Shown piece after piece: positions 1,276 to 15,641 of a stretch of 64,000 nucleotides of DNA. Position 1 is the first letter of the stretch; each line of letters starts with the position of its first letter. The stretch covers positions 248,001 through 312,000 of IMG/VR virus record IMGVR_UViG_3300032236_000747; one strand, written 5' to 3'. The notes under the pieces are model-generated. The model searched no databases, had not been told where the DNA came from, and saw nothing but the letters and a program-made list of their open reading frames with translations. The translations under genes were made by a program, and so were the position numbers.

Positions 1276-1280
1276 GAGTT

Positions 1281-1680: not shown

Positions 1681-1724
1681 CCATTATTTTAATTTATTTT
1701 TAGCCTAGCAAAAACCATGCTTTT

Positions 1725-1763
1725 AGACCCCGAGACGATTTCTCTGGATTTGCTCCGGGGTCT
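1725..1763 (-). terminator. Inverted repeat, possible terminator, built from two CGGGGTCT motifs
   Basis: AGACCCCG...CGGGGTCT just after the stop of 1769..2011. Confidence 0.45.
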
Positions 1764-1768
1764 TTGAA

Positions 1769-2277: not shown

Positions 2278-3155
2278 TAGAGCATGTTCCTGCGCATACA
2301 TGTAGTCTTCGCCATGGCCTGCCAAGAAGCAGGGAATGCCTTCTTGAGATCGGCTATTTTAAGAACCATGCGCAAACTCAGCTCGCGCAGCTTGTCTTTA
2401 TACGTGTTAACGTAGTCTAGGATCTCTTGCTGCTCTACAGCGGGGTCTGTAAACTCGTACCTAGTTAACATTCCATCTGCGACTATGCTCTTGATCCACA
2501 AGAGTTTCTCTCGCATGGTATCCATCTGCAGATCGATATAGTGGCAGCGTGACTCAAGTGCGCTCAAGTGCTCACGTAGCTTCTTACTCTTCACGTGCTC
2601 GAACTTGATGTTCGTGATGAAGATCGCTGATCCCTTAAACTCAAAGCGATCAGGAATACCTTCCCCGCGCAGCATACGTGAATCCGTGTTCCAGGCGATC
2701 CAACGACGCTCGCTGCTGTCTAGGGCACCCTTGAGGATGTTGAGGCTTAGTTCATCGAGCAGGATCTGATCGCAGTCATCGAAGACCACCACGTGGTTCT
2801 CGTCGCTGTACTCGTAGAGTTTAGCGTAGAGGCCTAGCGCACTCATAGCGCCTTTAACAATCTCATACTTAGGTTTACGTTCCCCTAAGATATCAAAGAG
2901 GCCGTCCTTCTGAAGTACTGCTTCCACACCATAGCTCTTGCCAACACCGGGTGGGCCAGAAACAATCATCGCACGCACATCACCGCGCTTGATCGCCTTG
3001 GTCATCTCATTGAGGATCGTAAAACGTTCCTTGAGGCGAGTCAAGATCTCGTCATCGGTCTCTTGTTCTACCGCTAGCTCGCGTGCACGAATCGCATCGT
3101 GATCGAACTCGAGGATAGTTGTACCAGCTGAGGGTTTAGTATTTGCTTTTGCCAT
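2277..3155 (-). CDS. AAA-family P-loop ATPase
   Basis: Walker A GPPGVGKS, Walker B VVVFDDCD, sensor IFITN, SRC arginine-finger-like motif. Confidence 0.85.
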   Translation of the reverse strand: MAKANTKPSAGTTILEFDHDAIRARELAVEQETDDEILTRLKERFTILNEMTKAIKRGDVRAMIVSGPPGVGKSYGVEAVLQKDGLFDILGERKPKYEIVKGAMSALGLYAKLYEYSDENHVVVFDDCDQILLDELSLNILKGALDSSERRWIAWNTDSRMLRGEGIPDRFEFKGSAIFITNIKFEHVKSKKLREHLSALESRCHYIDLQMDTMREKLLWIKSIVADGMLTRYEFTDPAVEQQEILDYVNTYKDKLRELSLRMVLKIADLKKAFPASWQAMAKTTCMRRNML

Positions 3156-3183
3156 ATATTAATCCTGTGTTGTATAAAAATGT

Positions 3184-3212
3184 ATTATACAATTATTTAC
3201 GATATTTGTCAA
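3184..3212 (-). promoter_or_regulatory. Early sigma70 promoter TTGACA-17-TATAAT
   Basis: Perfect consensus upstream of the ATPase. Confidence 0.8.
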
Positions 3213-3417
3213 GAAGCAGGTTTGCCAGAGTTAGGTCTGTGACCTCGTCAAAGGCCTCCAAGATCATGATCAGCTTCATCGCGTGCATTCTATGATTGCG
3301 AGTAAGACGAATCATGTAGGCGATCTCAGCAATACTGGCCTGTTGTTCCCAAGCCTCCCACTCATCGGTAGGGGCCGTGAGCATCCAACGAAGGTTGTCC
3401 TCATCGTAGGGATTCAT
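3193..3417 (-). CDS. Hypothetical protein
   Basis: ORF in the co-oriented early array. Confidence 0.7.
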   Translation of the reverse strand: MNPYDEDNLRWMLTAPTDEWEAWEQQASIAEIAYMIRLTRNHRMHAMKLIMILEAFDEVTDLTLANLLLDKYRK

Positions 3418-3632
3418 TTATTATCGTTGGTGACCTTGGTTTTAAACAATAAACCAAACAGTATGTTAAGACCCCAGGCTTGTAGCCACGTGATCTCTTG
3501 TACGCCGGTGACTGCTCCTACAAGGCAACCATTCCATAACCAGTACACGGGCAACGATACCAGCATGCCAATCACAATGATCAGCAAGGCAGCGACCAGC
3601 AATGCGCCAACGACGGCAAATAGTTTATCCAT
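3414..3632 (-). CDS. Small two-TM membrane protein
   Basis: Two hydrophobic helices, WLWN...ITWLQAWGL; SD and TTGACG-17-TATAAT promoter at 3652-3680. Confidence 0.8.
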   Translation of the reverse strand: MDKLFAVVGALLVAALLIIVIGMLVSLPVYWLWNGCLVGAVTGVQEITWLQAWGLNILFGLLFKTKVTNDNK

Positions 3633-3660
3633 GTATTTCTCCTATGTGTATATTATACAC

Positions 3661-4008
3661 TCAAAGGGTTTCTACGTCAAAGAGCTTGGCCTTCAACTCA
3701 GTCAAGCGTGTGCGTGCATTGACCAGCGCAAGGTGGATTTGATCCTCTCCAAGGCCATCGGTCATGACCTCACGGGGATCTTCGTAGAGGCAACCGCCGA
3801 GGTATTCGCTGGCAACCTCAAGGCCGTCAAACATCACTCGCGTGCGCAGCATGAACCAATCGTAGATACCTAGGTCGATCTTGCGGATGATTTCGGCTAC
3901 GTCGTCTTCTTCAAAGAGATCACGTGGGCTAATATCCTCCCAGGTCTTGTCGAGAATCACAGTCAGACCGTTGCGTTCCACGGTAGCAATGTGTTCATAA
4001 TAGCGCAT
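3661..4008 (-). CDS. Hypothetical phage protein
   Basis: ORF with AAGGAG SD. Confidence 0.8.
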   Translation of the reverse strand: MRYYEHIATVERNGLTVILDKTWEDISPRDLFEEDDVAEIIRKIDLGIYDWFMLRTRVMFDGLEVASEYLGGCLYEDPREVMTDGLGEDQIHLALVNARTRLTELKAKLFDVETL

Positions 4009-4074
4009 CTTCGGCTCCTTGATCTAGGTTATACAGCGGGGTCTTATAGCACAAGGGCAGATGCCCCTGTGATT

Positions 4075-4359
4075 TCAGTTGTCGAAATAGCGATCGTTGG
4101 CCAGACTCAATCCCAACACGTCATTGAGATCGTCGTCGGCATATGCATACTCGCCTTCAAGGTCCTCAGTTGTGTCGTCAGTGGTTTCATCTTCTTCAAC
4201 GAAGTTGTTTGCGTGCATCATCTCTTCTACGTCTGCTTCGGGCATACGCTCAAGGCAGGCACGCAATGCGTCTGTGGGATCTACCAAACCCTCATCAACC
4301 ATGGTAAGGAGCTTGATGGTAAACTCGCGGCTACGACGTGCGGTGCTGAACATTGACAT
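4075..4359 (-). CDS. Hypothetical acidic protein
   Basis: Start moved to the ATG at 4359 after AAGGAG; promoter TTGACA-17-TATAAT at 4384-4412. Confidence 0.75.
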   Translation of the reverse strand: MSMFSTARRSREFTIKLLTMVDEGLVDPTDALRACLERMPEADVEEMMHANNFVEEDETTDDTTEDLEGEYAYADDDLNDVLGLSLANDRYFDN

Positions 4360-4421
4360 GACATTCTCCTTGTTAAAAACTGTATTATAACAAGGGCCGG
4401 AGCCCTTGTCAATCAAAGACC

Positions 4422-4889
4422 CTACCAACTGGAATGGTATTCAAAGTCCCAACCATCGCCAAACATAGCAAGAGTTGATTCAATCTCTGAGGCCGTACGG
4501 CGCAGGTCGTCCCAGTAGTATTCGTCGATGTCTGTGCTACCAAAGAAGAAGCCTGCTGCAGGAGGCAGTAACTTAGCGTTCTTGGTATCCAAGACCTCAA
4601 GGATCAGCTGATGCAGCTCGTTGAGTTTTTCGCGGCTAACATAGTAGTGGCCGCAGTTGTCTTCACCGGCTTGCACGTTCTTGACAAACCAGTCGTGGAT
4701 TTGATTGCTCTTGCGCCAGTAGATAGCTTCAGCGATGATCTCTTTGACTCTGCTAGAGGCATGACCCCAGCGGTCACAATCCTTGAGCTCGGGGAAGAGC
4801 GCCTGCACGGTGTTCGCGATCTGTTTGTCGGGGTGGTCCCCGTGTGTCCACAGATAGCGTTTAGCGTTCAAATACATATCCAATCCCAT
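4422..4889 (-). CDS. Conserved hypothetical phage protein (MGLDMYL... type)
   Basis: MGLDMYL, YWRK.NQIH.WF, GFFFGS, Y.SSW motifs typical of a widespread phage family; SD present. Confidence 0.85.
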   Translation of the reverse strand: MGLDMYLNAKRYLWTHGDHPDKQIANTVQALFPELKDCDRWGHASSRVKEIIAEAIYWRKSNQIHDWFVKNVQAGEDNCGHYYVSREKLNELHQLILEVLDTKNAKLLPPAAGFFFGSTDIDEYYWDDLRRTASEIESTLAMFGDGWDFEYHSSW

Positions 4890-4902
4890 GATCTACTCCT
4901 TG

Positions 4903-5148
4903 TTAACTGAAAACTTTTTTGTCGCCGGACTCTTCATTGAAGGCGTAACCTGCGTTGTACTCGCGTACTTCGTCGTCGGTCAGCTCTTGGCCTTCAATGA
5001 GGGGAGGATTGCCTGTACCGTTAGGGTACTTGTGTGGATTAGGCCTGCGACCATAGTAACTGTCTGCTGAGCCACGATCAAATGGATCGCCGTGTTTGAC
5101 CGTGTAGTTAACGCCTTTGTACTCAACTTGATAAAGTGCATCAAACAT
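4903..5148 (-). CDS. Hypothetical phage protein
   Basis: HG.PFDRGSADSYYGR motif; SD present. Confidence 0.8.
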   Translation of the reverse strand: MFDALYQVEYKGVNYTVKHGDPFDRGSADSYYGRRPNPHKYPNGTGNPPLIEGQELTDDEVREYNAGYAFNEESGDKKVFS

Positions 5149-5211
5149 CTTTCACTCCTTGTAAAACTGTATTATAACACAAAGAAAGGCATTTTGCAAT
5201 GCCCTTCCACT

Positions 5212-5562
5212 TTAGCTGGCTTCTAGCACCACGTTAAACTTGCGCTCCCATGCGCTTAAGAAGTTGCCGTCTACGTCACAACTAACGTAGTTGTCACCCT
5301 GCATGCCCTGCTCGCTATAGCTTACTGCGCACAAACCTTGTTCAGCTAAAAACTTATTAAGTTGCAGCATGAACAGTCTGTCTGTGTAGATCAGCCCGTC
5401 TTTGTTTACATTCCAGTCGCTGGTGTCAAAGTATACACGCAGCTCTCCGAAGTCTTTGTCATCGCTTACATACGCAATACGCATGTCTTCAACTTCTACT
5501 TCAGTTGCTTTGTTGCTCCAGTAACCGTCGCCGCAGGTCTCAAAGTAAACACGTTCAAACAT
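5212..5562 (-). CDS. Hypothetical phage protein
   Basis: GLIYTD...YSEQGMQG motif; SD present. Confidence 0.8.
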   Translation of the reverse strand: MFERVYFETCGDGYWSNKATEVEVEDMRIAYVSDDKDFGELRVYFDTSDWNVNKDGLIYTDRLFMLQLNKFLAEQGLCAVSYSEQGMQGDNYVSCDVDGNFLSAWERKFNVVLEAS

Positions 5563-5601
5563 ATTCGCTCCTTGTTAAAAACTGTAGTATAACATCTAAG
5601 A

Positions 5602-5629
5602 CACAGCGTAGCTATAACACTACGCTGTG
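5602..5629. repeat. 10-bp perfect inverted repeat (CACAGCGTAG / CTACGCTGTG)
   Basis: Intergenic hairpin between early genes. Confidence 0.7.
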
Positions 5630-5641
5630 AAGGGTTATTTT

Positions 5642-5791
5642 TTATGCTAGCAGTTCCTCGTCCTCCGTGTTATAATCGTCCTCTGCTAACTCTGCAAGCT
5701 CGTTGTCTAACTGCTCGCGTGCGTAAGCAGCAATTAACGCTTGCTCCGCGTTGTGGATGCGTTGTGTGCTTGTGCTGTCAAAAACTAGCAT
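5642..5791 (-). CDS. Small acidic protein (49 aa)
   Basis: ATG at 5791 after AAGGAG; promoter at 5819-5846. Confidence 0.7.
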   Translation of the reverse strand: MLVFDSTSTQRIHNAEQALIAAYAREQLDNELAELAEDDYNTEDEELLA

Positions 5792-5875
5792 AGTTTGCTC
5801 CTTGTTAAAAACAGCTTCATTATACAACACAAAACCCAGTTGTCAACCTCTTTTTTAAAATATTTTTAGGCCAAG

Positions 5876-5915
5876 AAAAACCCCGGAAAGATCCATCGAA
5901 GAACCTTCCGGGGTT
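5876..5915 (-). terminator. Rho-independent terminator
   Basis: AACCCCGGAA...TTCCGGGGTT followed by a T run on the minus strand. Confidence 0.6.
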
Positions 5916-5955
5916 AAGATGCCTGCGGGAGCGATTCGCAGGACTTGGAGCGATC

Positions 5956-6228
5956 TTAGATCGTGATGCCCAATGCCATGGCCTTGTAGCCTAATGCTAC
6001 GAGTTCTTGGCTTGGTTGGCCCATTACGTACTCAACGACATGAGCGTTGTTGCCAGCTGTGCGTTCCTTGCGATATACTGCGAAACCATGTTGGCGAACA
6101 CGACTTACCTCTGCGCTGATGTTCTTGATACCAAAACGCTTTTCGGCTTGACTAGCAGTGATACGCTCGCCTGCTTGTAGTGCTTTGAATAGCTTGTATG
6201 CCTTGGTTTCTTTACTGAACTTTTTCAT
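5956..6228 (-). CDS. Small basic HTH / winged-helix-like DNA-binding protein
   Basis: L..GERIT..QA..RFGI.N..AEVSRVR..G pattern. Confidence 0.6.
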   Translation of the reverse strand: MKKFSKETKAYKLFKALQAGERITASQAEKRFGIKNISAEVSRVRQHGFAVYRKERTAGNNAHVVEYVMGQPSQELVALGYKAMALGITI

Positions 6229-6271
6229 ATCATTTCCTTTTGTTATATACTGCTTAACAGTTATAACAATA

Positions 6272-6562
6272 TTACACGATTACTCGCTTTCTTGCAAGGA
6301 GTTTTTTATCCAATCGCGTACGACTTTGTCCAGTTGGTTGAGTGCTTCTTGCATTTGTTTCTCCAAATTCCTTAGTGACATAATACTTGATAAGGCTACG
6401 TTGAATCATCGTAACCAAATCGCCTGAATCGTCTGTGACGAATCTAACTGGACAACGCCCCCAAGTTCCCAGCCTTTGGAACTCTTCAAACCATCGTCTG
6501 TGGTTCTTAAGGCTAGGATCAAAGACTACCCAAGGTCTACCTATGTATGCGAGTTTGCTCAT
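6272..6562 (-). CDS. Hypothetical protein
   Basis: ORF in the array. Confidence 0.75.
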   Translation of the reverse strand: MSKLAYIGRPWVVFDPSLKNHRRWFEEFQRLGTWGRCPVRFVTDDSGDLVTMIQRSLIKYYVTKEFGETNARSTQPTGQSRTRLDKKLLARKRVIV

Positions 6563-6596
6563 GTGTAGAGGCCTTTACAGCGGGGTCTTTGCAAGT

Positions 6597-6965
6597 TCAG
6601 AGTGGCGCTGCTTCAAGTTCGGTGCTAGCTGCTAGAGCAACCCCGACTGGAGCCTCGATAGGAGCTGCCGGGGTCTTAGCCTTGGCCTTCTTCTCAGCTT
6701 TGGGTTTAGCAATCACACCGCGCTTCTCACCTGCTGCTTCCAATGCTGCGCGAACGGCTTTGTTGCCGTTGTCGAAGTCAATGCTCAACAAGTAGGCCAC
6801 AGTCTCGGCCTTGGTCATCGGATGCTTGAGCTCAACGATATCAATATCAGTGTGCCCATTCTTCTTCAGAACCTTGGTACGAAGAGCGTCGTTGCAGAAA
6901 CGAACTTTGAACTCGCCGTCTTGTTTTGAAACACCAGCATGTGAAAATTTAACGATTGTTGACAT
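6597..6965 (-). CDS. Hypothetical protein with Lys/Ala-rich tail
   Basis: SD GGAG; promoter TTGACA-17-TATACT at 7013-7041. Confidence 0.8.
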   Translation of the reverse strand: MSTIVKFSHAGVSKQDGEFKVRFCNDALRTKVLKKNGHTDIDIVELKHPMTKAETVAYLLSIDFDNGNKAVRAALEAAGEKRGVIAKPKAEKKAKAKTPAAPIEAPVGVALAASTELEAAPL

Positions 6966-7043
6966 ATTTAGATCTCCTATAATGTCCGGATTAATAAAAC
7001 TAATGAAACACTAGTATAGCATAATCTGGCCATTATGTCAACC

Positions 7044-7238
7044 TTAGGCCCCGTAGTAGGGGCTGTAGATCTCCTCAGCATGTGGCATTTCTGCCACAAC
7101 CTTAAAGCCTTCTTCCCGAGCCATTTCGGCCTCATCCAAGGTGAACACAGTGTAGAGATAGAGATCTCCGTCCCAGATTTGATAGCTCATTTGAAACTTG
7201 TCCTTTGATGCTTGCAGTTTTGCTCGGAAGCCGCTCAT
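7044..7238 (-). CDS. Hypothetical protein
   Basis: Start moved to the ATG at 7238 after AGGAG; promoter at 7261-7289. Confidence 0.7.
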   Translation of the reverse strand: MSGFRAKLQASKDKFQMSYQIWDGDLYLYTVFTLDEAEMAREEGFKVVAEMPHAEEIYSPYYGA

Positions 7239-7304
7239 GCTAGTTGCTCCTAAAACGTTTATTATACAGCCACGCTGGGGGACTGTCAATCCCCCAGTGC
7301 GAGC

Positions 7305-7673
7305 TTAACCTGCCGCAAAAGCCGCTAGGGCTTCCACTGCTCCGTCAACATTGTTGAACACAAAGCGATCATAGACCTGTTGCGCTTCTTTTTCCAGTTG
7401 CTCCGCATAGTCGTTGAGAGCTTGCTTTTTGGCTTCCAGTTGCGGCCACACAATATCGTCTGTGATCATGTAAGGGCGTGTGCAGGTTTCCGTTCCCTCT
7501 TTGAGCACTAGCTCGCCTGCTTTAATAGCATCAAAGACCATGCCCCAGGTGATGTGATATGGGCTACCACCCTTGCCAAACAGCTCGTCTTGTTTAGCCT
7601 GCATCTTAGCCTCTGTGATTGCGTTAAGGCGTGCGCGGAGGTGTGTGCGTTGCTCTTGCGAAAGTTCAGTCAT
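7305..7673 (-). CDS. Hypothetical protein
   Basis: SD and promoter TTGACA-17-TATAAT at 7699-7727. Confidence 0.8.
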   Translation of the reverse strand: MTELSQEQRTHLRARLNAITEAKMQAKQDELFGKGGSPYHITWGMVFDAIKAGELVLKEGTETCTRPYMITDDIVWPQLEAKKQALNDYAEQLEKEAQQVYDRFVFNNVDGAVEALAAFAAG

Positions 7674-7738
7674 TTAATGCTCCTTGTTAAAAACGTTTAT
7701 TATACAGTGGTTTTACCAGTCTGTCAACAGATCTAGTA

Positions 7739-8152
7739 TTACTTGACTAGAGCGTAGGGTTTATCCCAACGACCGATGTTGATGTCAACGTAGTGGCTGC
7801 AGTGAAAGTAGTCTGTCATTGAATCACTGTGATCAAAGTAGTCCGGCCCCTTGAGCGCTGCTACAGCAGCAACGAGAAAGTCCTTGGCCTTGCCGTCAAA
7901 GTGCTCATGACACCAGTATGTGTTGATCTGCAGATAGTCACGATCTACATTGCGTGGACTGTTGTTGTAGCGTGGCTGCGCTGCGCATACTCTATTAGTA
8001 TTGCCAATGAAGTCAATGCTGCCCTGCTTGACAGTAAGTACCAAAGTACTGTGATTGTTCACACTCAACGAACCCTTGAGACCGTACTGCTTGAGCAGGG
8101 CCTTGATGGTGGGTGCGATCTTAGCTTTCATTTCCTGACTTACGTATGCCAT
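7739..8152 (-). CDS. Conserved hypothetical phage protein
   Basis: MAYVSQE...SDSMTDYF...INIGRWDKPY; SD and promoter at 8176-8204. Confidence 0.85.
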   Translation of the reverse strand: MAYVSQEMKAKIAPTIKALLKQYGLKGSLSVNNHSTLVLTVKQGSIDFIGNTNRVCAAQPRYNNSPRNVDRDYLQINTYWCHEHFDGKAKDFLVAAVAALKGPDYFDHSDSMTDYFHCSHYVDINIGRWDKPYALVK

Positions 8153-8228
8153 ACACTGCTCCTTGTAAAACGTTTATTATATAGTGGTTTTACCAGTTTG
8201 TCAACCACTATTTTAAAGTTTTTTCAAT

Positions 8229-8498
8229 TTAGATCACTTCCAACAAGCTAGCGGAAACTCTCCAATTCACTGTGGGAGTAGCGACTACAACGTTTTTGGG
8301 TCCAATGCTTTTAACAGTGCCCTGCTCAAGTCTTCCACCCCGGCCGGTGAATTGAACTCGTGCACCAATGGTCAGCTTGCGGATAATACCAGCAGCTACT
8401 CGGCTGCGTGCGAACTTAAGGGCATCGTTGAGCTCAGTAACCTGTTCTGCTGTGAATGCGCCTGTTACGATTGCTGCTTTGATAGTGGCAAAGTCCAT
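8229..8498 (-). CDS. Hypothetical protein with C-terminal SH3/KOW-like barrel
   Basis: L.IGARVQF...GTVK.I..KNVVV...WRV; ATG at 8498 after AAGGAG; promoter at 8524-8552. Confidence 0.7.
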   Translation of the reverse strand: MDFATIKAAIVTGAFTAEQVTELNDALKFARSRVAAGIIRKLTIGARVQFTGRGGRLEQGTVKSIGPKNVVVATPTVNWRVSASLLEVI

Positions 8499-8558
8499 GA
8501 TCAACTCCTTGTTAAAAAACACTATTATACACTAGGTTTTACCAGTTGTCAACCACTA

Positions 8559-8738
8559 TTATTCATCGTCCTCTTCATCTAGATCATCGCCCTCGGGATC
8601 CCAATCATCAATGAGATCACCCGGGCACACAGCGTATTCTCCAGAACACACCACGATGCCATCCACGATCTTCCAAGCGAAGAACAAGAAGAATACTAGG
8701 CCAAACCACCACTGCAGGCTGTGCGGTCTATGTTTCAT
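8559..8738 (-). CDS. Small membrane protein with acidic C-terminus (59 aa)
   Basis: Manual translation MKHRPHSLQWWFGLVFFLFFAWKIVDG...DDLDEEDDE. Confidence 0.6.
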   Translation of the reverse strand: MKHRPHSLQWWFGLVFFLFFAWKIVDGIVVCSGEYAVCPGDLIDDWDPEGDDLDEEDDE

Positions 8739-8749
8739 ATATATTAAGA

Positions 8750-8826
8750 TGGTGCGTCGAACAGGGCTCGAACCTGTGACCCAGCGATTATGAGTCGCTT
8801 GCTCTAACCAACTGAGCTATCAACGC
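8750..8826 (-). tRNA. tRNA with CAT anticodon, most likely tRNA-Ile2 (lysidine type)
   Basis: Cloverleaf: acceptor GCGTTGA/TCGACGC, D arm AGCTCAGTTGGTTAGAGC, anticodon arm AGCGA-CTCATAA-TCGCT (ileX-like), T loop GGTTCGAGCC, encoded CCA; own promoter at 8839-8867. Confidence 0.92.
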
Positions 8827-8850
8827 ATCATAGTATCTATTATACAGCCT

Positions 8851-9078
8851 CTAGGCCCGTTTGTCAACCTTAGCAGCGGGGTCTCTACGTATATACCTAT
8901 ATACTCGTTCATAGATGATCGAATCCTCAGCAGCTAGCTCAGTTAACATGCCCACAAGTAGTCCCAACTCATAGACAACCTTTAGGTGATGATCCCGATC
9001 TCGATACTCACTACTAGCTAGTCTAGCATTGAGCATATCATAGATGTGCTGCTGTATACGTTGATGACGATGATCCAT
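8851..9078 (-). CDS. Hypothetical protein
   Basis: Start moved to the ATG at 9078, which sits 5 nt below a TAAATA late-promoter motif. Confidence 0.65.
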   Translation of the reverse strand: MDHRHQRIQQHIYDMLNARLASSEYRDRDHHLKVVYELGLLVGMLTELAAEDSIIYERVYRYIRRDPAAKVDKRA

Positions 9079-9084
9079 GCTAGT

Positions 9085-9680
9085 ATTTACATACACGTAT
9101 ATAACTCACATAGTGCTAGTACACGTATGTATATACACATACACGTATATACACTGTGTAGCGTATATACAACACTGTATAAAATCACAGTTGACAACTC
9201 ACACATATACATATACGTATACTAGCCATATGCACGCAGCGGGGTCTTATACAGTGTATATAGATCTACCTAGACTCACAGTATATACAGTGATCTATGG
9301 TGGGAGAACCGTGGGAAAGAATCAGGAAGATTCTAGGCCGAAACGGTGGAAAATATGGCCTGAAAAACCGTGAAAATGTTGTTTTTATCATGAATTAAGG
9401 TAAAAAATATCTTGACCATTTTGGAGAGGCAGGCTATGCACAAATACCCCAAGCCATTAACTGCTCAGATAACCGAGTTATCCACAGCCTATCCACAGCC
9501 TATCCACAACCTTTACACAGCTTGTTCATAGTTCAACGTTCTCACAGCTTCTCTACTGTATATACGTATATGTGTATATGCCTTATACACGCAGCGGGGT
9601 CTTATACTGTGTATACGCATACACATAGACTTACAGTGAGTTTCTAGACTAGTCTATGTGTATATGTGTATATACGTACT
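9085..9680. other. Putative replication origin or DnaA-binding locus
   Basis: Non-coding; alternating purine-pyrimidine tracts on both sides; direct repeat ACGCAGCGGGGTCTTATAC at 9234 and 9589; three AAC(C/G)GTG(G/A) repeats at 9306, 9341 and 9365; AT-rich segment; DnaA-box array; near the gene-strand switch. Confidence 0.5.
9478..9530 (+). repeat. DnaA-box array with 11-bp period
   Basis: TTATCCACA (9478), CTATCCACA (9489), CTATCCACA (9500), CTTTACACA (9511), TTGTTCATA (9522), each separated by 2 bp. Confidence 0.7.
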
Positions 9681-10266
9681 AGTAGGTTACGCCCAGAGCT
9701 TTGCGTCCAGGACTAGCATGATCACCACAAGCATAGGTCTTTTCGTAGTGACACATCATACACAGAGTTTGGAGATTTGAAGGATCATTGTTAGTGGGAT
9801 TACCATCTATGTGATCTACCTGCAGCTGACCTGTGAGTCTTATAGTATGTGTGCAAGGATATCCTAGTACGTGTCCGTCCAGATTTTCACAGTGATCTTT
9901 GCGATATTGACGATATGGATGCTGGCTGTTCTTCCAATCAACATAGCTTTTAAAGCCTTCTTTGTGTGCGCAGACATCGTGCACAGTTTTAACCCACTCA
10001 GCATCAGGGTGTTTGGCCGCGTATTTTCTTGCTGTATTAGCATCGTGACAGCTCTTGCACACAGTTCTATACACAGGTTTTGCCGAAGTCCAGTGCCAAT
10101 CTTGTACGATTCTTGGGTTGGTGCACTGTGGAGTTGAGCAAGTGGGATGTTCAGTTAGGTCGTTGTAGCTGGGATGTCTGCGTCTAGGTGTGCCCTGTTC
10201 GCGAGCTAGATTGCGTGCTGTTTTATGATTAAGGGCGTTGAGTTCTTTGATTGTATAACGTGCCAT
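9679..10266 (-). CDS. HNH endonuclease with N-terminal Zn-finger motifs
   Basis: LQVDHIDGNPTNNDPSNLQTLCMMCH; additional CxxC motifs. Confidence 0.8.
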   Translation of the reverse strand: MARYTIKELNALNHKTARNLAREQGTPRRRHPSYNDLTEHPTCSTPQCTNPRIVQDWHWTSAKPVYRTVCKSCHDANTARKYAAKHPDAEWVKTVHDVCAHKEGFKSYVDWKNSQHPYRQYRKDHCENLDGHVLGYPCTHTIRLTGQLQVDHIDGNPTNNDPSNLQTLCMMCHYEKTYACGDHASPGRKALGVTY

Positions 10267-10375
10267 GATGAGTGTATAATGCTAAAAAATCTGCGCTGAG
10301 TGCTAGCGCACACATGTACAAATATACAGTATTCCCGGTTAGTCTTCAACGACAAGGTTTGCCATAAATATCCTT

Positions 10376-11815
10376 ATGCGCTACAATGAATTTGTTATCA
10401 AGGAAGACTTTGGCTATGCTTGGAGATTTGAGAATCCTCCCGGGGCTTTGCCAGTTAAACTAGCCACTAATACCAACCGTGAGGGCTTTATCGACGCAGA
10501 GACTTGGCCCGCAGAGGACGGCCGGGGTGTGATGCTACATCTACACTCTGTGGCCGCAGGCTGGTATTTCAGTGACGATCCCATAGAAGGATGGGTGGAC
10601 TTTGTCTGCAACATCGACAATGTCAAGGGGGGTAAGATCACTGAAACAGACTACTCCAATCCCAGCAACAGCTATGAACCCGAGCTTGATTATGACACAC
10701 TGTGGGGTGAAATCACTGAGCTGGTTGACTACTTTCGCAAGGCCTATGGTAATACCTGGAAAGAAGTAGAAGATGAGCTAGTGGGCGGGTGGACTGTTGA
10801 CGAAGCTAGAGAACCTCAACCCTCGCTGTGGCCAGGTAGATTGGGTCCACAACGTGATCTCAGCACAGAAGAAATAGACCATATCACGGACTTTACACTG
10901 AGCTGGGACTTTGACGGCCACGACGAGAACTATGATCCCTACAGGGCCTTTGAAGATGCCAGCCACGATGAACTAGGCGATGCTGTACAGGTACACTGGG
11001 GAAATCTTCTGGATGCCAGCGGGCTAGCCACTGACTATTCTAGACTATCTAGCCCTGATGCAGACAATGTGGCCCGTCTTTTGGAACTCCTAGATGATGC
11101 CCGCAAGGAAGCTGAACAGGTCTGGGAAAGCAGGATCGTTGAAACACCACAGGACGAAAACGCCATACACGAACTAGCCCAGGGTATAATCAAATGGCTG
11201 TTAGATCACATAGACAGCATACGTGATGGCTACATAGGCGGGGGTGACCTCAAGGGTGTGATAAACATAGGCACCATAGAGGACCTCACGGGCTATCTAC
11301 GCAAGCATAGAAAACAGGGCTCTATCAATGACGTGCATGGGCGTGATGCTGCTGCCCTAGAGACCATAGTCAAAGATACCCGCATGGGCCTAATACACCC
11401 CATGCCCGATGATGCTGAGGGTGCCTACAACGCAGGCCTCAAGTTCCTTATCTTGGATCTAGAACTGGTTAAAAAGAGCCCACCACGCATGTTGGGCACT
11501 ATCATGCATGAACTACGCCATGCCCTAGACTCCAGCAAGAGCAATGATCGCTTCAATAAAAAAGACGATGCCAAGAACTATATATTTCAGCCTCTTGAGA
11601 TCAACGCACGTTTTACACAGGCCCTAGACGATATACGCAAAATGGCGGCCAAGAACCCCCAGCCCGAGCTGCTCATGGATATCATCAAGTTCAACCTGAA
11701 CAAACACAATATACGACAGATATTCCCCGGGGGTACAAAAAGCCCCAGATATCGCAGACTAGTTAACAGAGTGTACCAGCAACTAGAGTACCATAAAGGA
11801 AAGACCAAGCCATGA
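10376..11815 (+). CDS. Putative internal head protein with C-terminal HEXXH metallopeptidase-like domain
   Basis: IMHELRHALD...EINARF; N-terminus MRYNEFVIKE; TAAATA-N5-ATG. Confidence 0.65.
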   Translation: MRYNEFVIKEDFGYAWRFENPPGALPVKLATNTNREGFIDAETWPAEDGRGVMLHLHSVAAGWYFSDDPIEGWVDFVCNIDNVKGGKITETDYSNPSNSYEPELDYDTLWGEITELVDYFRKAYGNTWKEVEDELVGGWTVDEAREPQPSLWPGRLGPQRDLSTEEIDHITDFTLSWDFDGHDENYDPYRAFEDASHDELGDAVQVHWGNLLDASGLATDYSRLSSPDADNVARLLELLDDARKEAEQVWESRIVETPQDENAIHELAQGIIKWLLDHIDSIRDGYIGGGDLKGVINIGTIEDLTGYLRKHRKQGSINDVHGRDAAALETIVKDTRMGLIHPMPDDAEGAYNAGLKFLILDLELVKKSPPRMLGTIMHELRHALDSSKSNDRFNKKDDAKNYIFQPLEINARFTQALDDIRKMAAKNPQPELLMDIIKFNLNKHNIRQIFPGGTKSPRYRRLVNRVYQQLEYHKGKTKP

Positions 11816-12222
11816 GATTCAACGAATTCACCCAACCCCCACAGCAGCCAAGTCAGCCAAAGATGCCCGAATACGACTTCGAAGCTGAACTAGATCTCAG
11901 TGACATTGTCAAGGGCCTACTATGGGGTAGCACCAGCAAGTGGGACTACAGCAACAGCATCGTTGGGGTAGTATCCGGCGTAGAGTATCATGATACCAAG
12001 CGTGGCCCAGATACCTTGGCAGTAGTGGATGTCTATGAAGTATGGGCACCCATAGGCGTTGACGACGAGGGCGAAGGCGGCGATTGGGTAGACATCAAGG
12101 GTGAACTAGACAGTGAAACCATAGATAGTCTAGAAGAACAGGCTGTGGAGCATGAGCAGTGGAAAAACCGCAATACCTTTAGCCATGCTAGGTATATAAC
12201 CCGCAGTGACTTTGAGAACTAA
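11812..12222 (+). CDS. Hypothetical acidic protein (MRFNEF N-terminus)
   Basis: Coupled to the upstream gene. Confidence 0.7.
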   Translation: MRFNEFTQPPQQPSQPKMPEYDFEAELDLSDIVKGLLWGSTSKWDYSNSIVGVVSGVEYHDTKRGPDTLAVVDVYEVWAPIGVDDEGEGGDWVDIKGELDSETIDSLEEQAVEHEQWKNRNTFSHARYITRSDFEN

Positions 12223-13010
12223 GGACCTGGGCTGAATATAGGCCTAGCAGCCAGGCTATCGGCAGGGGGTTCTAGTATAGTCCACTCAGTGCCCAATACA
12301 GGCGTTAGGTGTATGTGGCTGCGTGGTATCCAATACTTGTCACCCTCGATCTGCATTTGATCAACAATATTACTAAACACTGAATCCAGTAAGATAAGGG
12401 CCTGCGCACCCTCGAGTATCTTTAACCAATCAAAGACATTGTCTGTTTGTAAAGTTATGTTTATGACCTGCCAATCTATGGGTATGGCGCTGAGATCAGC
12501 ATCACACTTGTAGGTGCTGCCTTCTGTGTGTACGACCACATAGTTGGGGTTGGCGACTAGTTTGTTGTAGAGGGCCTGCTCACGGGCAGGGTTACGTGTA
12601 ATACATTCAGCTAGAGTCCACTTCTTTAAAAAGGGCACACCTGCCTTTGAATACTTGAACTCATCAAAGTGCTGTATTTGAAAGAAGGGCTGCTTGCTGA
12701 GCTCGGGTACGATGTTGAGAGCCTGATACAAACAGATAATCTCGTCACATTTAAGTGCTTTTAATCTTTTCATGGGCTCAGCGTAGAAAAACTGTCCCTG
12801 ATTGTCTTCTGGAATAGGGATCCACTGTACCCAGGGTGCTGTTTCTTTGACAGAGCCCCAAAAGGCTTCACACACGGGCCATACAACAGTATGCCCTTGA
12901 TCTACATATGCTTTGGCTATGGGTAGAGTGATAACAATATCACCTAGCCCTCTTGATTGTATAATACCTATTTTCATATTTTTAGTTATCGAAGTCAAAT
13001 AGCTGCTCAA
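12219..13010 (-). CDS. Glycosyltransferase, GT9 / heptosyltransferase-like
   Basis: KIGIIQSRGLGDIVITLP; C-terminal LILLDS motif. Confidence 0.65.
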   Translation of the reverse strand: MSSYLTSITKNMKIGIIQSRGLGDIVITLPIAKAYVDQGHTVVWPVCEAFWGSVKETAPWVQWIPIPEDNQGQFFYAEPMKRLKALKCDEIICLYQALNIVPELSKQPFFQIQHFDEFKYSKAGVPFLKKWTLAECITRNPAREQALYNKLVANPNYVVVHTEGSTYKCDADLSAIPIDWQVINITLQTDNVFDWLKILEGAQALILLDSVFSNIVDQMQIEGDKYWIPRSHIHLTPVLGTEWTILEPPADSLAARPIFSPGP

Positions 13011-13932
13011 CTAATGTTGGCGGAGGTAAGGCCACGGCCGCTGCGGGTATCGTGGCACTGTGTAAGAGTATTTCTTCTGCTGCCTTGGCTGTGTGTGTGG
13101 CTACGTTGTTTTCATCTACGCCTCGGGCACGCCTACCTGCTGTGTAGGTGATTGGGTATTTCTTTAACAACAGTTGCCCTTGATTACTGGTATAGAAGTT
13201 ATCGCCGGCTTCTCGGTTACAGTAGAACACAATATCGCCTGCTAGGTCTTGTTGTTTACAAAAGTTTATCAGTGTTAGATGATCGGCGTCTGTGAACGTT
13301 TGCCCATAGCTAGTAAAGCTGTCTCTATAGGGTGGGTCAAAGAACCAAAAGGTCTTGCCCTGAGTGTGCGGAACAACATTGCTCCAGTTGCCACAATAGA
13401 TATCTACCTGCTGTAGGAATGCATTCCACTCTATGACATTGTCCTTGTCATAGACCTTGGAGGTTTGATTTAACAGTCCGCTGGGGGTAGCAAAGCGTCC
13501 ATTACTGGTTTTATTGGTTTGCCAAATACCGTTGAAGCCCGTTTTCATCAAGAAGTAGAGGCTAGCACTTTCATCAGTGGCTGACCACTGTGTCCAGTTA
13601 GTGGTGTACTCTGTGCGCAGAGTATAGTAGAATGCCTTGCGATCTACCTTAGACAAGGGCAAGTATTGCGCAGTCAGCTGATCCATACGTGCCATAAAGG
13701 CCAAGTGATCTGTTTTGATTGCTGTGTAGATACCCACAATCTCTGCGTTGATATCATTGAGCACAAACTTTGTTACACTTGGACAGTGGTCTTTGACCCA
13801 GCACATCATTGCGCCACCCCCAAAGAATGGCTCAGCAAATGTATCGTATTGAGTCGTGGGTATTCCGGGATCCGCAATATACTTGGGGATCATCTTGTTC
13901 TTGCCGCCTGCCCATATATACAATGGCTTCAT
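12982..13932 (-). CDS. DNA adenine methyltransferase (Dam / D12 class)
   Basis: WAGGK, EPFFGGG (motif I), LNDIN, FFDPPY (motif IV). Confidence 0.9.
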   Translation of the reverse strand: MKPLYIWAGGKNKMIPKYIADPGIPTTQYDTFAEPFFGGGAMMCWVKDHCPSVTKFVLNDINAEIVGIYTAIKTDHLAFMARMDQLTAQYLPLSKVDRKAFYYTLRTEYTTNWTQWSATDESASLYFLMKTGFNGIWQTNKTSNGRFATPSGLLNQTSKVYDKDNVIEWNAFLQQVDIYCGNWSNVVPHTQGKTFWFFDPPYRDSFTSYGQTFTDADHLTLINFCKQQDLAGDIVFYCNREAGDNFYTSNQGQLLLKKYPITYTAGRRARGVDENNVATHTAKAAEEILLHSATIPAAAVALPPPTLVEQLFDFDN

Positions 13933-14801
13933 ATTGTTATATTAACATATCCGTCTGTGATAGCCTGTGTATCTCCAGATCTTTCTGACTTCCAACTAAA
14001 CTTCAGTGATGTAAAGATAGATAGATCAGTGATATCTGCGATATTGGCTATGAGTTTCTTGTCTTGATCAATGATGATTAGACTGTTCCAACTATCAATG
14101 TCCTTGTACCAACCTAGTACTCTATGTCCGATGATGTTGTTAAAATCGTTGCCATCTTTGGCGTTAACTAGTTCAGCACACATTGCGTCAATGTCGTGCC
14201 CCGGGTATAGTTTACCGAAATATTCTTTGTAGATAGCCAAAGGATCGGGCTTAGTTTTAATCCAATCCTGATGGCCGCTGAACTTGGTAACGGGTCCTGC
14301 CCTGTTGCCTTCAAAAACTGTTCTATTAAGCTCGTCTTGTACACGAATGGCTTCTGCCAAAGGTTTAAGACTAGCGCCGTTGTTCTTTAGTTCACGGATG
14401 CCTCCGGCAACTCTACCATCACCCTTGCCATCTGTGCGTTCAAAGGTCCAGCCTTGGATAACCATGGCCAAATACAGCTCGCCTACGCCTAGACCCTTGC
14501 CCTTGAACTCTACTAGAGTGGGCATGAGTCTTTGCCAAGTCTTGTTATTCTTTAATGCTAGGGGATAAAGCTCTTCAAAGTTTAACATGAAGTTAGTGTT
14601 AAACTTAGCGCCTCCTACTAGCTGTGCGTCATCCATTAAAATATCTAGCATTTCGAACCCGTCACCTTCATGTGTGTGGGCTAACCAAGCGTGTGCTAGG
14701 AAATGCTTACAAAATGCTGTTAGTCCAATCTTCTTGGACGGCATCATTTTTCTTTTTGTTAACAGTTGGTTTACTTTCTTTTCGAAGTCGTTGATCGACA
14801 T
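13929..14801 (-). CDS. Putative PD-(D/E)xK restriction endonuclease
   Basis: GVGELYL...GDG...RELK motif; translationally coupled to the MTase; own promoter TTGACA-17-TAGTAT at 14822-14850. Confidence 0.45.
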   Translation of the reverse strand: MSINDFEKKVNQLLTKRKMMPSKKIGLTAFCKHFLAHAWLAHTHEGDGFEMLDILMDDAQLVGGAKFNTNFMLNFEELYPLALKNNKTWQRLMPTLVEFKGKGLGVGELYLAMVIQGWTFERTDGKGDGRVAGGIRELKNNGASLKPLAEAIRVQDELNRTVFEGNRAGPVTKFSGHQDWIKTKPDPLAIYKEYFGKLYPGHDIDAMCAELVNAKDGNDFNNIIGHRVLGWYKDIDSWNSLIIIDQDKKLIANIADITDLSIFTSLKFSWKSERSGDTQAITDGYVNITI

Positions 14802-14864
14802 GTGTCTCTACCTTATACAGTATACTACACTGTATAGAAACACATGTCAAAGTTTTTGAGCGTC

Positions 14865-15641
14865 TTAGAAATAGTAGCCGTTTGGCTGCTTAGGAAAGTA
14901 GCATTCGTTGCGTTCGATTGGCAAATCTCTACGGCCTTCGCAGTAGAACTCAGCACCCAAACCAATAGCCAATGATAGGGCTACACTTTGGTTGCCAATA
15001 AATGCGCCAACACCTTTGATTAGGTTAGCAACTTCCAACAATGTAGTTGTGGGTTGATACTTACAATCTTTCCAATCAGTCAACTTGACAAAGTCTTCGT
15101 ATTCATTTGGCAAGCCAACAAACAATGCTTCTTGGTCCAAACCGTCTGCCTTCCATTGATCGTAGGCAGGATTACGCTCTCCTGGAACCCAACGACCTGT
15201 GCGGTTAACAATAACACTGATGCCTTCTGGCGCCATTGGTGTAGGCGCAGTGAGCCAAGGCGTTGTTCTTAGTTGTTCTTTAACAACAGGATCATTAATA
15301 CCAAAACAACCTGCGTAGATATCTACATAGTTGCCAGGGTGTCCAACAAACGGAACTCTAAAGCGATCTAGGTTATGGGTAACTTCGTGCTTCTTTGGAT
15401 CCAAGGGTTCGAATGATTCGATATATGTCTGTGCCAGCATAAAGGATTTCATGAACTCGTAGTCTTTGAGATTCATTCTGCCTTGATGGAATGGATTTGG
15501 ATCTGCTCCGTAAAAATGCTTGCCAATCCAATCTATTTGATTCATGTGTAAGTAGAACTTACCGCCGCCTGTGTATTGAGCAATGGGTAGACTGTAGATT
15601 AAATCGCCCAAAGTGCCCGAGTGTTTGTATGAGTTTGCCAC
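14865..15641 (-). CDS. Glycosyltransferase, GT9-like
   Basis: HSGTLGDLIYSLP; LLEVANLI...FIGNQS...LAIGLG. Confidence 0.65.
   Translation of the reverse strand: MANSYKHSGTLGDLIYSLPIAQYTGGGKFYLHMNQIDWIGKHFYGADPNPFHQGRMNLKDYEFMKSFMLAQTYIESFEPLDPKKHEVTHNLDRFRVPFVGHPGNYVDIYAGCFGINDPVVKEQLRTTPWLTAPTPMAPEGISVIVNRTGRWVPGERNPAYDQWKADGLDQEALFVGLPNEYEDFVKLTDWKDCKYQPTTTLLEVANLIKGVGAFIGNQSVALSLAIGLGAEFYCEGRRDLPIERNECYFPKQPNGYYF

What the first reader, a model, noticed from the sequence alone, without database searches (positions are those of the whole stretch)
9085..9680. oriC-like locus: helically phased DnaA boxes in a phage intergenic region
Seen: a perfect TTATCCACA followed by four progressively degenerate boxes at exact 11-bp spacing (9478-9530). 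Upstream lie an AT-rich stretch and three iteron-like repeats (9306, 9341, 9365). The locus is bracketed by a 19-bp direct repeat (9234, 9589) and long alternating purine-pyrimidine tracts, near the gene-strand switch. Known: E. coli oriC uses a strong box anchoring weak boxes 2 bp apart to grow a DnaA filament. Inference: this is a host-DnaA-dependent origin or a DnaA sink that blocks host replication, which would be unusual for a T4-like phage.
Basis: partly seen in the sequence, partly recalled or inferred. Interest (0 to 1): 0.7.

Follow-up and report, generated by a model that had tools for sequence, protein, structure and literature searches.

The report
Conserved DnaA-box array in jumbo phage
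A row of five binding sites for the host's replication-initiator protein DnaA sits in a non-coding control region of an uncultured T4-like giant phage, and related phages keep it while the DNA around it drifts, so these phages probably tie their replication start or early gene expression to the host's own replication switch.

Summary
Five 9-mers sit at exact 11-bp spacing at 9478-9530: one perfect TTATCCACA, two with 8 of 9 matches, two weaker.

This array is the only non-coding DnaA-box cluster in a 354.7-kb metagenome-derived jumbo phage genome. The phage has a Gp23-type capsid and is Rak2/GAP32-like.

The array is not a slippage accident. Seven related uncultured phage contigs, found through two different neighbouring genes, carry 2 to about 14 DnaA boxes at the same 11-bp phasing in the same early-gene control region.
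- In the closest syntenic relative the whole 600-bp locus aligns at 55% identity, but boxes 1-3 align at 91%.
- Box positions are conserved and the 2-bp spacers are not.

The phage encodes no DnaA. It has its own primase and DnaB-like helicase about 12 kb away.

The oriC analogy is only partly met. There is no clear unwinding element, IHF site, GATC cluster or Rep gene. The "bracketing repeat" is a dispersed, strand-specific motif (GACCCCGCTG).

My best reading is a host-DnaA docking array acting as a promoter-coupled replication origin (about 0.4). DnaA control of early transcription is a close rival (about 0.3). A DnaA sink is less likely.

The parts
9478..9530 (+). Array of five DnaA-box 9-mers at exact 11-bp phasing: perfect, 8/9, 8/9, then two weak.
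   Evidence: The boxes are orthologous to five boxes in relative L305. Box positions are 36/45 identical against 4/10 for spacers.
9412..9440 (+). Sigma-70-like promoter-like element, TTGACC-17 nt-TATGCA, with an A-tract upstream. It points into the boxes.
   Evidence: Read. It is homologous to a perfect TTGACG-17-TATAAT promoter just downstream of the boxes in L309, and to a version with a 20-nt spacer in L305. The -10 is poor, so activity is not shown.
9371..9410 (.). The most A+T-rich 40-mer of the locus (82.5% A+T). It is either an A-tract/UP-like segment or a modest unwinding element.
   Evidence: It is only in the top 2.7% of the genome for low duplex stability.
9304..9380 (+). Three weak iteron-like repeats with core AAC[CG]GTG at 9307, 9342 and 9366.
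   Evidence: the only such triple in the genome. The third repeat is conserved in L305 and L309. Homologous 22-bp units are tandemly repeated three times in L311.
9588..9607 (-). Right copy of the 20-bp direct repeat. It contains the motif GACCCCGCTG (minus strand) flanked by Pu/Py tracts.
9233..9252 (-). Left copy of the 20-bp direct repeat with the same motif.
9083..9222 (.). Alternating purine-pyrimidine (GTATATAC-type) tracts belonging to the motif modules.
   Evidence: They are partly conserved in L305. Similar tracts precede the promoter of the 137-aa gene in L014, L101 and L106.
9557..9678 (.). Right-hand Pu/Py tracts and a 20-bp imperfect hairpin (arms 9612-9631 and 9651-9670) after the HNH gene.
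9679..10266 (-). HNH endonuclease gene. It is an insertion next to the control region and is absent from the syntenic relative L305.
8750..8826 (-). tRNA-Met. Upstream at 8867-8839 it has a perfect TTGACA-17-TATAAT promoter, itself preceded by a motif copy (8874-8883).
7739..8152 (-). 137-aa gene (phrog_10415), used as the first anchor to find relatives.
12219..13010 (-). 263-aa gene, used as the second, independent anchor to find positional homologues.

Best explanation
The array is a genuine, selectively maintained docking site for a host DnaA oligomer. A strong box anchors weaker boxes on the same face of the helix. It is the core of a single-copy cis-acting control region at the head of the phage's early small-gene cluster.

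I think it most likely works as a replication origin coupled to transcription. Host DnaA assembles on the boxes next to a sigma-70 promoter and iteron-like repeats. This helps open, or hold open, the neighbouring easily melted DNA, so that the phage's own DnaB-like helicase and primase can start replication.

What is shown:
- the boxes, their phasing, their uniqueness in the genome and their conservation;
- that the phage has no DnaA of its own;
- that it has its own helicase and primase.

What is inferred:
- DnaA binding;
- unwinding and helicase loading;
- any effect on replication.
For: Reality and uniqueness:
- The array occurs in 0 of 100 shuffles.
- It is the only non-coding perfect box in 354.7 kb.

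Conservation, found through two independent anchor genes:
- L098/L099 have 3+2 boxes, L101 has 3, L106 has 4 perfect, L014 has 2, and L012=L104 has 2.
- L305 has 5 boxes at the same place and in the same orientation as the window. L309 has 9 perfect boxes plus about 5 near-perfect ones in 274 bp, with box pairs every 41-54 bp, that is 4-5 helical turns.
- Across 160 related loci (1.27 Mb), box pairs with at most 2 mismatches number 10 at period 11, and 0 at periods 9, 10 and 13-20.

Footprint:
- The locus is 55% identical to L305 overall, but boxes 1-3 are 91% identical.
- Box positions are 36/45 conserved against 4/10 for spacers, Fisher p = 0.018.
- Flanks in more distant relatives do not align at all.

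Single copy:
- In G005, 9 of 12 perfect boxes lie in the cluster. In G006 the only perfect box is in the array.

Features that fit an origin:
- The non-coding region is large (about 600-860 bp).
- Iteron-like repeats have homologues in relatives, including 3 perfect tandem 22-bp units in L311.
- A homologous promoter sits next to the boxes in the window, L305, L309 and L104.
- The order and orientation of boxes relative to the promoter and genes vary between relatives. A position-independent role tolerates this better than promoter control does.
- Phage primase and DnaB-like helicase lie 12-13 kb away in the window genome and in G006.
- No phage DnaA gene exists.

Generality:
- In a sample of 120 viral contigs, adjacent perfect boxes peak at spacings of 11-12, 21 and 32 bp.
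Against: - There is no clear duplex-unwinding element. The least stable 40-mer is only in the top 2.7% of the genome, and it lies on the 5' side of the TTATCCACA strand. In E. coli and B. subtilis origins the unwinding element lies on the 3' side (the geometry is from memory).
- There is no IHF consensus site and no GATC cluster. I saw no DnaA-trio-like 3-mer repeat by eye.
- No initiator or Rep gene lies next to the locus. The neighbouring genes differ in every relative.
- Five cultured Rak2/GAP32-like phages lack such arrays, so this is not the ancestral origin of the group.
- Three relatives with 68% identity in the anchor gene, and L311/L312, show no boxes in the DNA fetched.
- T4-type replisomes are not known to need DnaA.
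- There are no RNA or replication data. The only run holding the sequence is a DNA metagenome kept as contigs.
Confidence: 0.4

Rival explanations
1. DnaA-dependent transcription switch. Host DnaA bound to the boxes represses, blocks or activates the adjacent sigma-70 promoter, or reinforces termination between early transcription units. Early phage gene expression would then follow the host's DnaA-ATP level, that is its growth state.
For: - All arrays lie in intergenic DNA of the early-type small-gene cluster, next to strong promoters or terminators.
- In L309 the boxes end about 57 bp upstream of a perfect TTGACG-17-TATAAT promoter. In L099 they end about 55 bp upstream of an extended -10 promoter.
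- In L014, L101 and L106 they follow the intrinsic terminator of the 137-aa gene by 6-66 nt. This recalls the asnC terminator, where bound DnaA blocks RNA polymerase (Schaefer and Messer 1988/1989, as cited in PMC10950094).
- In the window a homologous promoter-like element fires into the boxes.
Against: - Box position relative to the promoter flips from upstream (L309, L104) to downstream (window, L305), which would invert the regulatory logic.
- Orientation relative to the genes is not conserved.
- The window's -10 (TATGCA) and L305's 20-nt spacer make that promoter doubtful.
- Fourteen helically phased boxes in L309 are far more than promoter control needs.
- With one site per genome, only one transcription unit would be controlled.
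Confidence: 0.3
2. DnaA sink or DnaA-state modulator (datA- or DARS-like). The array, amplified on replicating phage DNA, titrates or inactivates host DnaA and so stops host chromosome initiation.
For: - The boxes are high-affinity and phased for cooperative oligomers.
- Box number ranges up to about 14 in L309.
- The function would not depend on position or orientation, which matches the variable placement.
- In L309 the array directly follows tRNA genes, as datA follows glyV-X-Y in E. coli (PMC10950094).
Against: - There is one array per genome, with only 2-5 boxes in most relatives.
- No IHF consensus site was found, and datA needs one (PMC10950094).
- At one copy early in infection the array cannot compete with the host's own sites. 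Later the host is already taken over.
- No benefit is evident for a phage that has its own replisome.
Confidence: 0.12
3. The 9-mers are sites for a phage-encoded DNA-binding protein and only resemble DnaA boxes.
For: - Many small proteins of unknown function are encoded nearby.
- Other lineage-specific repeats in the same region (the GACCCCGCTG motif and the 22-bp units) must have binders of their own.
Against: - The conserved sequence is exactly the near-universal DnaA consensus.
- Substitutions between relatives fall at the tolerated positions of that consensus.
- The 11-bp phasing is that of DnaA arrays, and it recurs in unrelated viral contigs of 35-60% G+C.
- No protein with a DnaA domain IV is encoded.
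Confidence: 0.08
4. A functionless 11-bp slippage minisatellite that happens to contain a DnaA-box-like word.
For: Units 1-3 are nearly identical, as recent slippage would give. Copy number varies among relatives.
Against: The array is conserved in seven related contigs while the flanks diverge. Boxes are conserved and spacers are not. A perfect box is kept in every array.
Confidence: 0.03

Closest known systems
DnaA-oligomerisation arrays of E. coli oriC (R1-tau-R5M-I1-I2 and R4-C1-I3-C2-C3)
   Same: - A strong consensus box anchors same-orientation weaker boxes separated by 2 bp, so the phasing is 11 bp.
- Some relatives (L099, L104) have two arrays pointing away from each other, like the two halves of oriC. 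The oriC layout is from memory (Rozgaja et al. 2011).
   Different: - The strong box is at the 5' end of the TTATCCACA strand, not the 3' end.
- There are no 13-mer unwinding repeats, no IHF or Fis site and no GATC cluster.
- There is no dnaA gene.
- It lies in a virulent-type phage that has its own replisome.
Iteron-type theta origins that also use host DnaA (P1 oriR, F oriS, pSC101, RK2 oriV)
   Same: DnaA boxes lie in tandem beside short direct repeats and an A+T-rich stretch in one non-coding block. A relative has three perfect 22-bp tandem repeats, a typical iteron length.
   Different: - No Rep gene is recognisable next to the locus, and the neighbouring genes vary.
- The window's iterons are weak and irregularly spaced (35 and 24 bp).
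- The genome is a 355-kb myovirus, not a plasmid or phage-plasmid.
T4 origins oriF (uvsY) and oriG (34): a promoter plus a downstream unwinding element that forms an R-loop primer
   Same: The phage belongs to the T4 superfamily. A promoter-like element points into the element, with easily melted TA-rich tracts beyond it.
   Different: T4 origins have no DnaA boxes and use a MotA-dependent middle promoter. Here the -10 is poor and no transcript is shown.
E. coli datA and the asnC terminator/DnaA roadblock; DnaA-regulated promoters
   Same: These are clusters of DnaA boxes outside an origin that act by binding DnaA. Boxes lie next to a terminator or tRNA genes in some relatives (PMC10950094).
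   Different: There is no IHF site. Geometry relative to promoters and terminators is not conserved among relatives.
DnaA-box arrays in other viral contigs (IMG/VR), for example L002-L007
   Same: These arrays have the same 11-bp phasing and even the same 19-nt word. They lie in intergenic DNA of unrelated phages.
   Different: They occur in unrelated genomes with different neighbours (RecE/RecT module, small terminase, phosphoesterase). Their function is equally untested.

Membership tests
DnaA-box cluster / DnaA-oligomerisation region | At least one consensus 9-mer TTATCCACA, plus further boxes fitting TT(A/T)TNCACA | tested here: met
   Mismatches to the relaxed consensus are 0, 1, 1, 1, 2 in the window and 0, 1, 0, 1, 1 in L305.
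DnaA-box cluster / DnaA-oligomerisation region | Same-orientation boxes in helical phase (2-bp spacers, 11-bp period) | tested here: met
   In relatives only period 11 is enriched.
DnaA-box cluster / DnaA-oligomerisation region | Evolutionary conservation of boxes relative to flanks | tested here: met
   Boxes 1-3 are 91% identical against 53-55% for the rest of the locus. Boxes are 36/45 conserved against 4/10 for spacers. Seven related contigs carry arrays.
DnaA-box cluster / DnaA-oligomerisation region | Physical binding of DnaA | not testable with these tools
   Complex prediction gave no verdict for protein-DNA. EMSA or footprinting is needed.
Chromosome-type origin (oriC, basal unwinding system) | Marked A+T-rich duplex-unwinding element next to the boxes | tested here: inconclusive
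   The least stable 40-mer (9380) is only in the top 2.7% of the genome. Nothing comparable is conserved in relatives.
Chromosome-type origin (oriC, basal unwinding system) | IHF/Fis site and GATC cluster (enterobacterial type) | tested here: not met
   No WATCAANNNNTTR match in the window or in five relatives. GATC density is 3.4 per kb against 3.8 per kb for the genome.
Chromosome-type origin (oriC, basal unwinding system) | DnaA-trio 3-mer repeats beside the proximal box | tested here: inconclusive
   Inspected by eye only. No 3-nt periodic run was seen.
Chromosome-type origin (oriC, basal unwinding system) | Cognate initiator gene (dnaA) in the replicon | tested here: not met
   PF08299 gave no hit. 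PF00308 gave only a sub-threshold hit.
Iteron-type plasmid/P1-like origin | Three or more direct repeats of 17-22 bp (iterons) | tested here: inconclusive
   The window has three weak repeats of about 14 nt. Homologous 22-bp units occur three times in tandem in L311, which has no DnaA boxes.
Iteron-type plasmid/P1-like origin | Adjacent Rep initiator gene | tested here: not met
   The neighbours are an HNH endonuclease and proteins without family matches. They are not conserved in L305, L309 or L104.
T4-type R-loop origin | Active promoter reading into an unwinding element | tested here: inconclusive
   TTGACC-17-TATGCA lies at 9412-9440. It was not picked up by the promoter scan. It is homologous to a perfect promoter in L309. 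No RNA data exist.
datA-like DnaA-inactivating locus | IHF-binding site between essential boxes | tested here: not met
   The requirement is taken from PMC10950094.
DnaA-regulated promoter / roadblock | Boxes at a fixed position relative to a promoter or terminator | tested here: not met
   The boxes are adjacent in every case, but the order and orientation differ between window/L305, L309/L104, L099 and L014/L101/L106.

The most novel reading that the evidence does not exclude
A clade of uncultured T4-superfamily jumbo phages, although equipped with their own helicase, primase and polymerase, starts or licenses genome replication through the host initiator DnaA. It does so at a single DnaA-oligomerisation array combined with phage-specific iterons and a promoter. 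Phage replication would then be gated by the host's DnaA-ATP state. This would be the first host-initiator-dependent origin in this phage superfamily.
Probability: 0.3. Interest if true: 0.8.

Novelty: new variant of a known kind. Interest (0 to 1): 0.6.

Why it matters
How jumbo and T4-related phages outside T4 itself choose where and when to start replication is largely unknown.

This locus is a conserved, single-copy array of sites for the host's master initiator, in phages that carry their own replisome. It gives a concrete candidate origin or host-state sensor, small enough (about 55 bp) to test by footprinting, plasmid assays and point mutation.

Helically phased DnaA-box arrays are also common in unrelated viral contigs. 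The question of what phages do with host DnaA is therefore broader than this one genome.

Full-text searches found no paper with both "DnaA box" and "jumbo phage". They found only software-predicted origins in another lytic phage.

Tried and rejected
- DNA search of the locus against 50,697 phage records matched only the tRNA.
- The 479-aa neighbour has no relative in phage records or IMG/VR.
- Rfam gave only the tRNA plus sub-threshold microRNA-like noise on the Pu/Py tracts.
- A multiple alignment of the intergenic DNA of the window, L014, L106 and L101 showed nothing alignable except the boxes.
- A small ORF at 9436-9531 (31 aa), read through the boxes, is rejected as a gene. In L305 the corresponding frame and length differ, and the shared residues are just the translated boxes.
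- I tested whether the AAA+ ATPase at 2277-3155 is a DnaC/DnaA-like loader. It is very conserved, but its predicted fold (pLDDT 70) matches generic AAA+ proteins (RuvB, MoxR/NorQ, clamp loader), so it gives no support.
- Complex prediction with four DnaA domain IV copies on the array was not folded and gave no verdict. It is not evidence either way.
- GC skew follows gene orientation and says nothing about an origin.
- Sequencing runs: only a DNA metagenome kept as contigs holds the locus. It reproduces the sequence without differences but gives no depth profile or RNA.
- IHF, GATC and duplex-stability scans were negative or weak.
- Five cultured Rak2/GAP32-like phages have no comparable array.

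Full report
**What the genome is.** The window is positions 248,001-312,000 of a single 354,680-bp contig with 40.4% G+C. The contig is a metagenome-derived virus record rated complete. It encodes a Gp23-family major capsid protein. That protein is 68-71% identical to those of the Rak2/GAP32-like jumbo phages: Sinorhizobium phage Phosso, Vibrio phage 2.275.O, Cronobacter GAP32 and Pectobacterium CBB. So "T4-like phage" is right in the broad sense. No close relative is in the cultured-phage collection. Only a DNA metagenome run holds the sequence. Its independently built contigs reproduce 7500-11500 without a difference, but there are no RNA data and no depth profile.

**The observation.** The sequence at 9478-9530 reads as five 9-mers, each followed by two spacer bases. 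The 9-mers are TTATCCACA, CTATCCACA, CTATCCACA, CTTTACACA and TTGTTCATA.
- Tandem Repeats Finder sees a period-11 array.
- Three TATCCACA words at this phasing never occur in 100 shuffles of the window.
- The genome has only two perfect boxes, about what base composition predicts (my arithmetic gives roughly four). The other lies inside a 947-aa ORF. The genome is therefore not rich in boxes; it has one non-coding cluster.
- The A+T-rich stretch, the three weak repeats, the direct repeat (20 bp, 9233-9252 = 9588-9607) and the alternating purine-pyrimidine tracts are all present.

**Surroundings.** The locus is a 580-bp non-coding gap inside a block of minus-strand small genes.
- To the left lie a doubtful 81-aa ORF, then tRNA-Met with a perfect TTGACA-17-TATAAT promoter, then a second perfect promoter and more small genes.
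- To the right lies an HNH endonuclease gene (minus strand). Beyond it is the strand switch to a 479-aa and a 136-aa gene of unknown function. A Dam-type methyltransferase lies further on.
- The whole block (genome about 245-262 kb) has 45-55% G+C against 40% for the genome.
- Its far end abuts the phage's primase and DnaB-like helicase genes, 12.4 kb from the array.
- The phage has no DnaA. There is no hit to the DNA-binding domain and only a sub-threshold hit to the ATPase domain.

**The "bracketing" repeat.** The two 20-bp copies contain GACCCCGCTG on the minus strand. This motif occurs seven times in the genome (six exact 10-mers plus one copy that keeps only the ACCCCGCT core). All copies lie between window 1367 and 9600, all on the minus strand, and typically 16-50 nt upstream of a gene start or of the tRNA promoter. 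In the window and seven related contigs, 29 of 29 copies lie on the strand of the small genes, usually beside GTATATATACAG-type tracts. It is therefore a dispersed, transcription-linked signal of this lineage. It is not a boundary of the DnaA locus.

**Conservation, the main result.** I looked for relatives through the 137-aa gene at 7739-8152.
- Among 80 IMG/VR and 80 metagenome loci, the only close same-strand pairs of near-consensus boxes were in the nearest relatives, and most were at exactly 11 bp. L098/L099 have three boxes one way and two the other. L101 has three, L106 has four perfect, L014 has two and L012=L104 has two.
- Over all 160 loci (1.27 Mb), pairs with at most two mismatches number 10 at period 11, and 0 at periods 9, 10 and 13-20.
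- A second anchor, the 263-aa gene at 12219-13010, found positional homologues. L305 comes from a 194-kb contig whose helicase is 91% identical to this phage's. It has five boxes at the same place and in the same orientation, again between two motif copies.
- L309 comes from a 353-kb, 99%-complete genome. It has nine perfect boxes plus about five near ones in 274 bp. They form pairs at 11 bp, and the pairs recur every 41-54 bp, so all sit on one face of the helix.
- In each genome the array is unique.

**Footprint.** The whole window locus aligns to L305 at 55% identity, but boxes 1-3 align at 91%, the longest conserved block.
- Unit by unit, box positions are 36/45 identical and spacers 4/10 (p = 0.018). 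The window's two "degenerate" boxes correspond to better boxes in L305.
- With more distant relatives nothing but the boxes aligns.
- The slippage-minisatellite reading is thus rejected.
- Five cultured Rak2/GAP32-like phages have no such array. Some relatives (L010/L011/L013, L311/L312) show none in the DNA fetched. The element is therefore specific to a sub-clade.

**Other conserved parts.** On the plus strand at 9412-9440 lies TTGACC-17 nt-TATGCA, preceded by an A-tract and the third "iteron".
- This segment is homologous to a perfect TTGACG-17-TATAAT promoter in L309 and to a similar segment in L104 and L305.
- In L309 and L104 the boxes lie upstream of it. In the window and L305 they lie downstream, so the promoter-like element points into them. 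There its -10 is poor (window) or its spacer is 20 nt (L305).
- The weak iterons have homologues too. L311 has three perfect tandem 22-bp units of related sequence, and inverted copies further on, but no DnaA boxes.
- L104 has a second 11-bp-phased array of seven units. Three of them read as weak boxes, and the array faces away from its two strong boxes.
- The genes between the 263-aa gene and the control region differ in every relative, and the HNH gene is an insertion peculiar to the window.

**How general the architecture is.** The exact 19-nt word spanning two boxes also occurs in six unrelated viral contigs, each with 4-10 phased boxes. They lie next to different genes. In a capped sample of 120 viral contigs with two perfect boxes within 33 bp, start-to-start spacings peak at 11-12 (74 cases), 21 (23 cases) and 32 (10 cases). 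The window's array therefore follows a recurrent architecture.

**What it does.** DnaA binding itself could not be tested, because the complex predictor gives no verdict for DNA.

For an origin:
- the array is single-copy;
- it lies in a large, repeat-rich non-coding block with iterons and a promoter;
- its placement and orientation vary in a way a position-independent function tolerates;
- the phage has its own helicase and primase but no recognisable initiator.

Against an oriC-type origin:
- there is no marked unwinding element;
- there is no IHF site and no GATC cluster;
- no trios were seen by eye;
- there is no Rep gene nearby;
- cultured relatives lack the array.

For transcription control:
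- the boxes are close to promoters and terminators in every relative. This includes a layout like the asnC terminator, where bound DnaA blocks RNA polymerase (cited in PMC10950094).

Against transcription control:
- the geometry is not conserved;
- 14 phased boxes in L309 are excessive for that job.

A sink is possible but poorly motivated by one small array per genome. I therefore rank the readings as follows:

| Reading | Probability |
|---|---|
| Promoter-coupled, DnaA-assisted origin | about 0.4 |
| DnaA-dependent transcription switch or roadblock | about 0.3 |
| DnaA sink or DnaA-state modulator | about 0.12 |
| Sites for a phage protein | about 0.08 |
| Functionless repeat | about 0.03 |

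**Novelty.** DnaA-box clusters are well known in chromosomes, plasmids and P1-type prophages. Some phage papers list software-predicted boxes. Full-text searches found no paper holding both "DnaA box" and "jumbo phage", and none holding my four terms for DnaA titration by a phage. A conserved, single-copy, helically phased array in T4-superfamily jumbo phages with their own replisome is, to my knowledge, a new variant of a known kind.

Noticed in passing
window 1367, 2446, 4042, 6586, 8882, 9245, 9600 (minus strand): The motif RGACCCCGCTGY occurs seven times, only in this 8-kb stretch of the 354.7-kb genome and always on the gene strand. It lies 16-50 nt before gene starts or the tRNA promoter. 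In the window plus seven relatives, 29 of 29 copies are on the gene strand, usually beside GTATATATACAG-type tracts. It is probably a lineage-specific transcription signal. Its binder is unknown.
   Followed up: partly
window 1-15,600 (genome about 245-262 kb): This is a higher-G+C block (45-55% against 40% for the genome) of mostly minus-strand small genes. Its head is the DnaA-box control region and its tail abuts the primase/DnaB-like helicase operon.
   Followed up: partly
window 9679-10266 (-): A free-standing HNH endonuclease gene is inserted between the control region and the rightward genes. It is absent from the syntenic relative L305. The slot between the 263-aa gene and the control region holds different cargo in each relative. 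In L104 the cargo is an AlgH-like gene, 31% identical to the one at genome 245,068-245,634.
   Followed up: partly
L309 6211-6484 (IMGVR_UViG_3300020045_006153): Nine perfect TTATCCACA plus about five near boxes lie in 274 bp. They form pairs at 11 bp, recurring every 41-54 bp. The array lies directly after three tRNA genes and before a perfect sigma-70 promoter. It is the largest array of the clade.
   Followed up: partly
L311 13125-13192 (IMGVR_UViG_3300032297_000073): Three tandem 22-bp repeats, homologous to the window's weak iterons, with inverted copies about 150 bp further on. This relative has no DnaA boxes.
   Followed up: partly
L104 3005-3081: A second 11-bp-phased array of seven units (GTGAATACTGT / GTGAAGATTGA). 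The reverse complement of the first unit type is a weak DnaA box. It lies 85 bp from the two strong boxes and faces the other way.
   Followed up: no
window 2277-3155 (-): A 292-aa AAA+ ATPase (phrog_1250) is 75-84% identical to more than 8000 metagenomic proteins. Its predicted fold is a generic AAA+ (RuvB, MoxR, clamp loader). Its function is unknown despite very strong conservation.
   Followed up: partly
window 8867-8839 and 8552-8524 (-): Two perfect TTGACA-17-TATAAT promoters, one for tRNA-Met and one for the 97-aa/137-aa genes. They imply a host with a canonical sigma-70.
   Followed up: no
window 52,560-55,730: Runs of 9-, 18-, 27- and 45-bp tandem repeats of the GGN-NNN-NNN type. They suggest collagen-like Gly-X-Y repeats in a large protein, possibly a fibre.
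   Followed up: no
L179-L298 (sample of 120 IMG/VR contigs): Adjacent perfect DnaA boxes in viral contigs show start-to-start spacings that peak at 11-12, 21 and 32 bp. Helically phased arrays are therefore common in phage and prophage DNA generally.
   Followed up: partly
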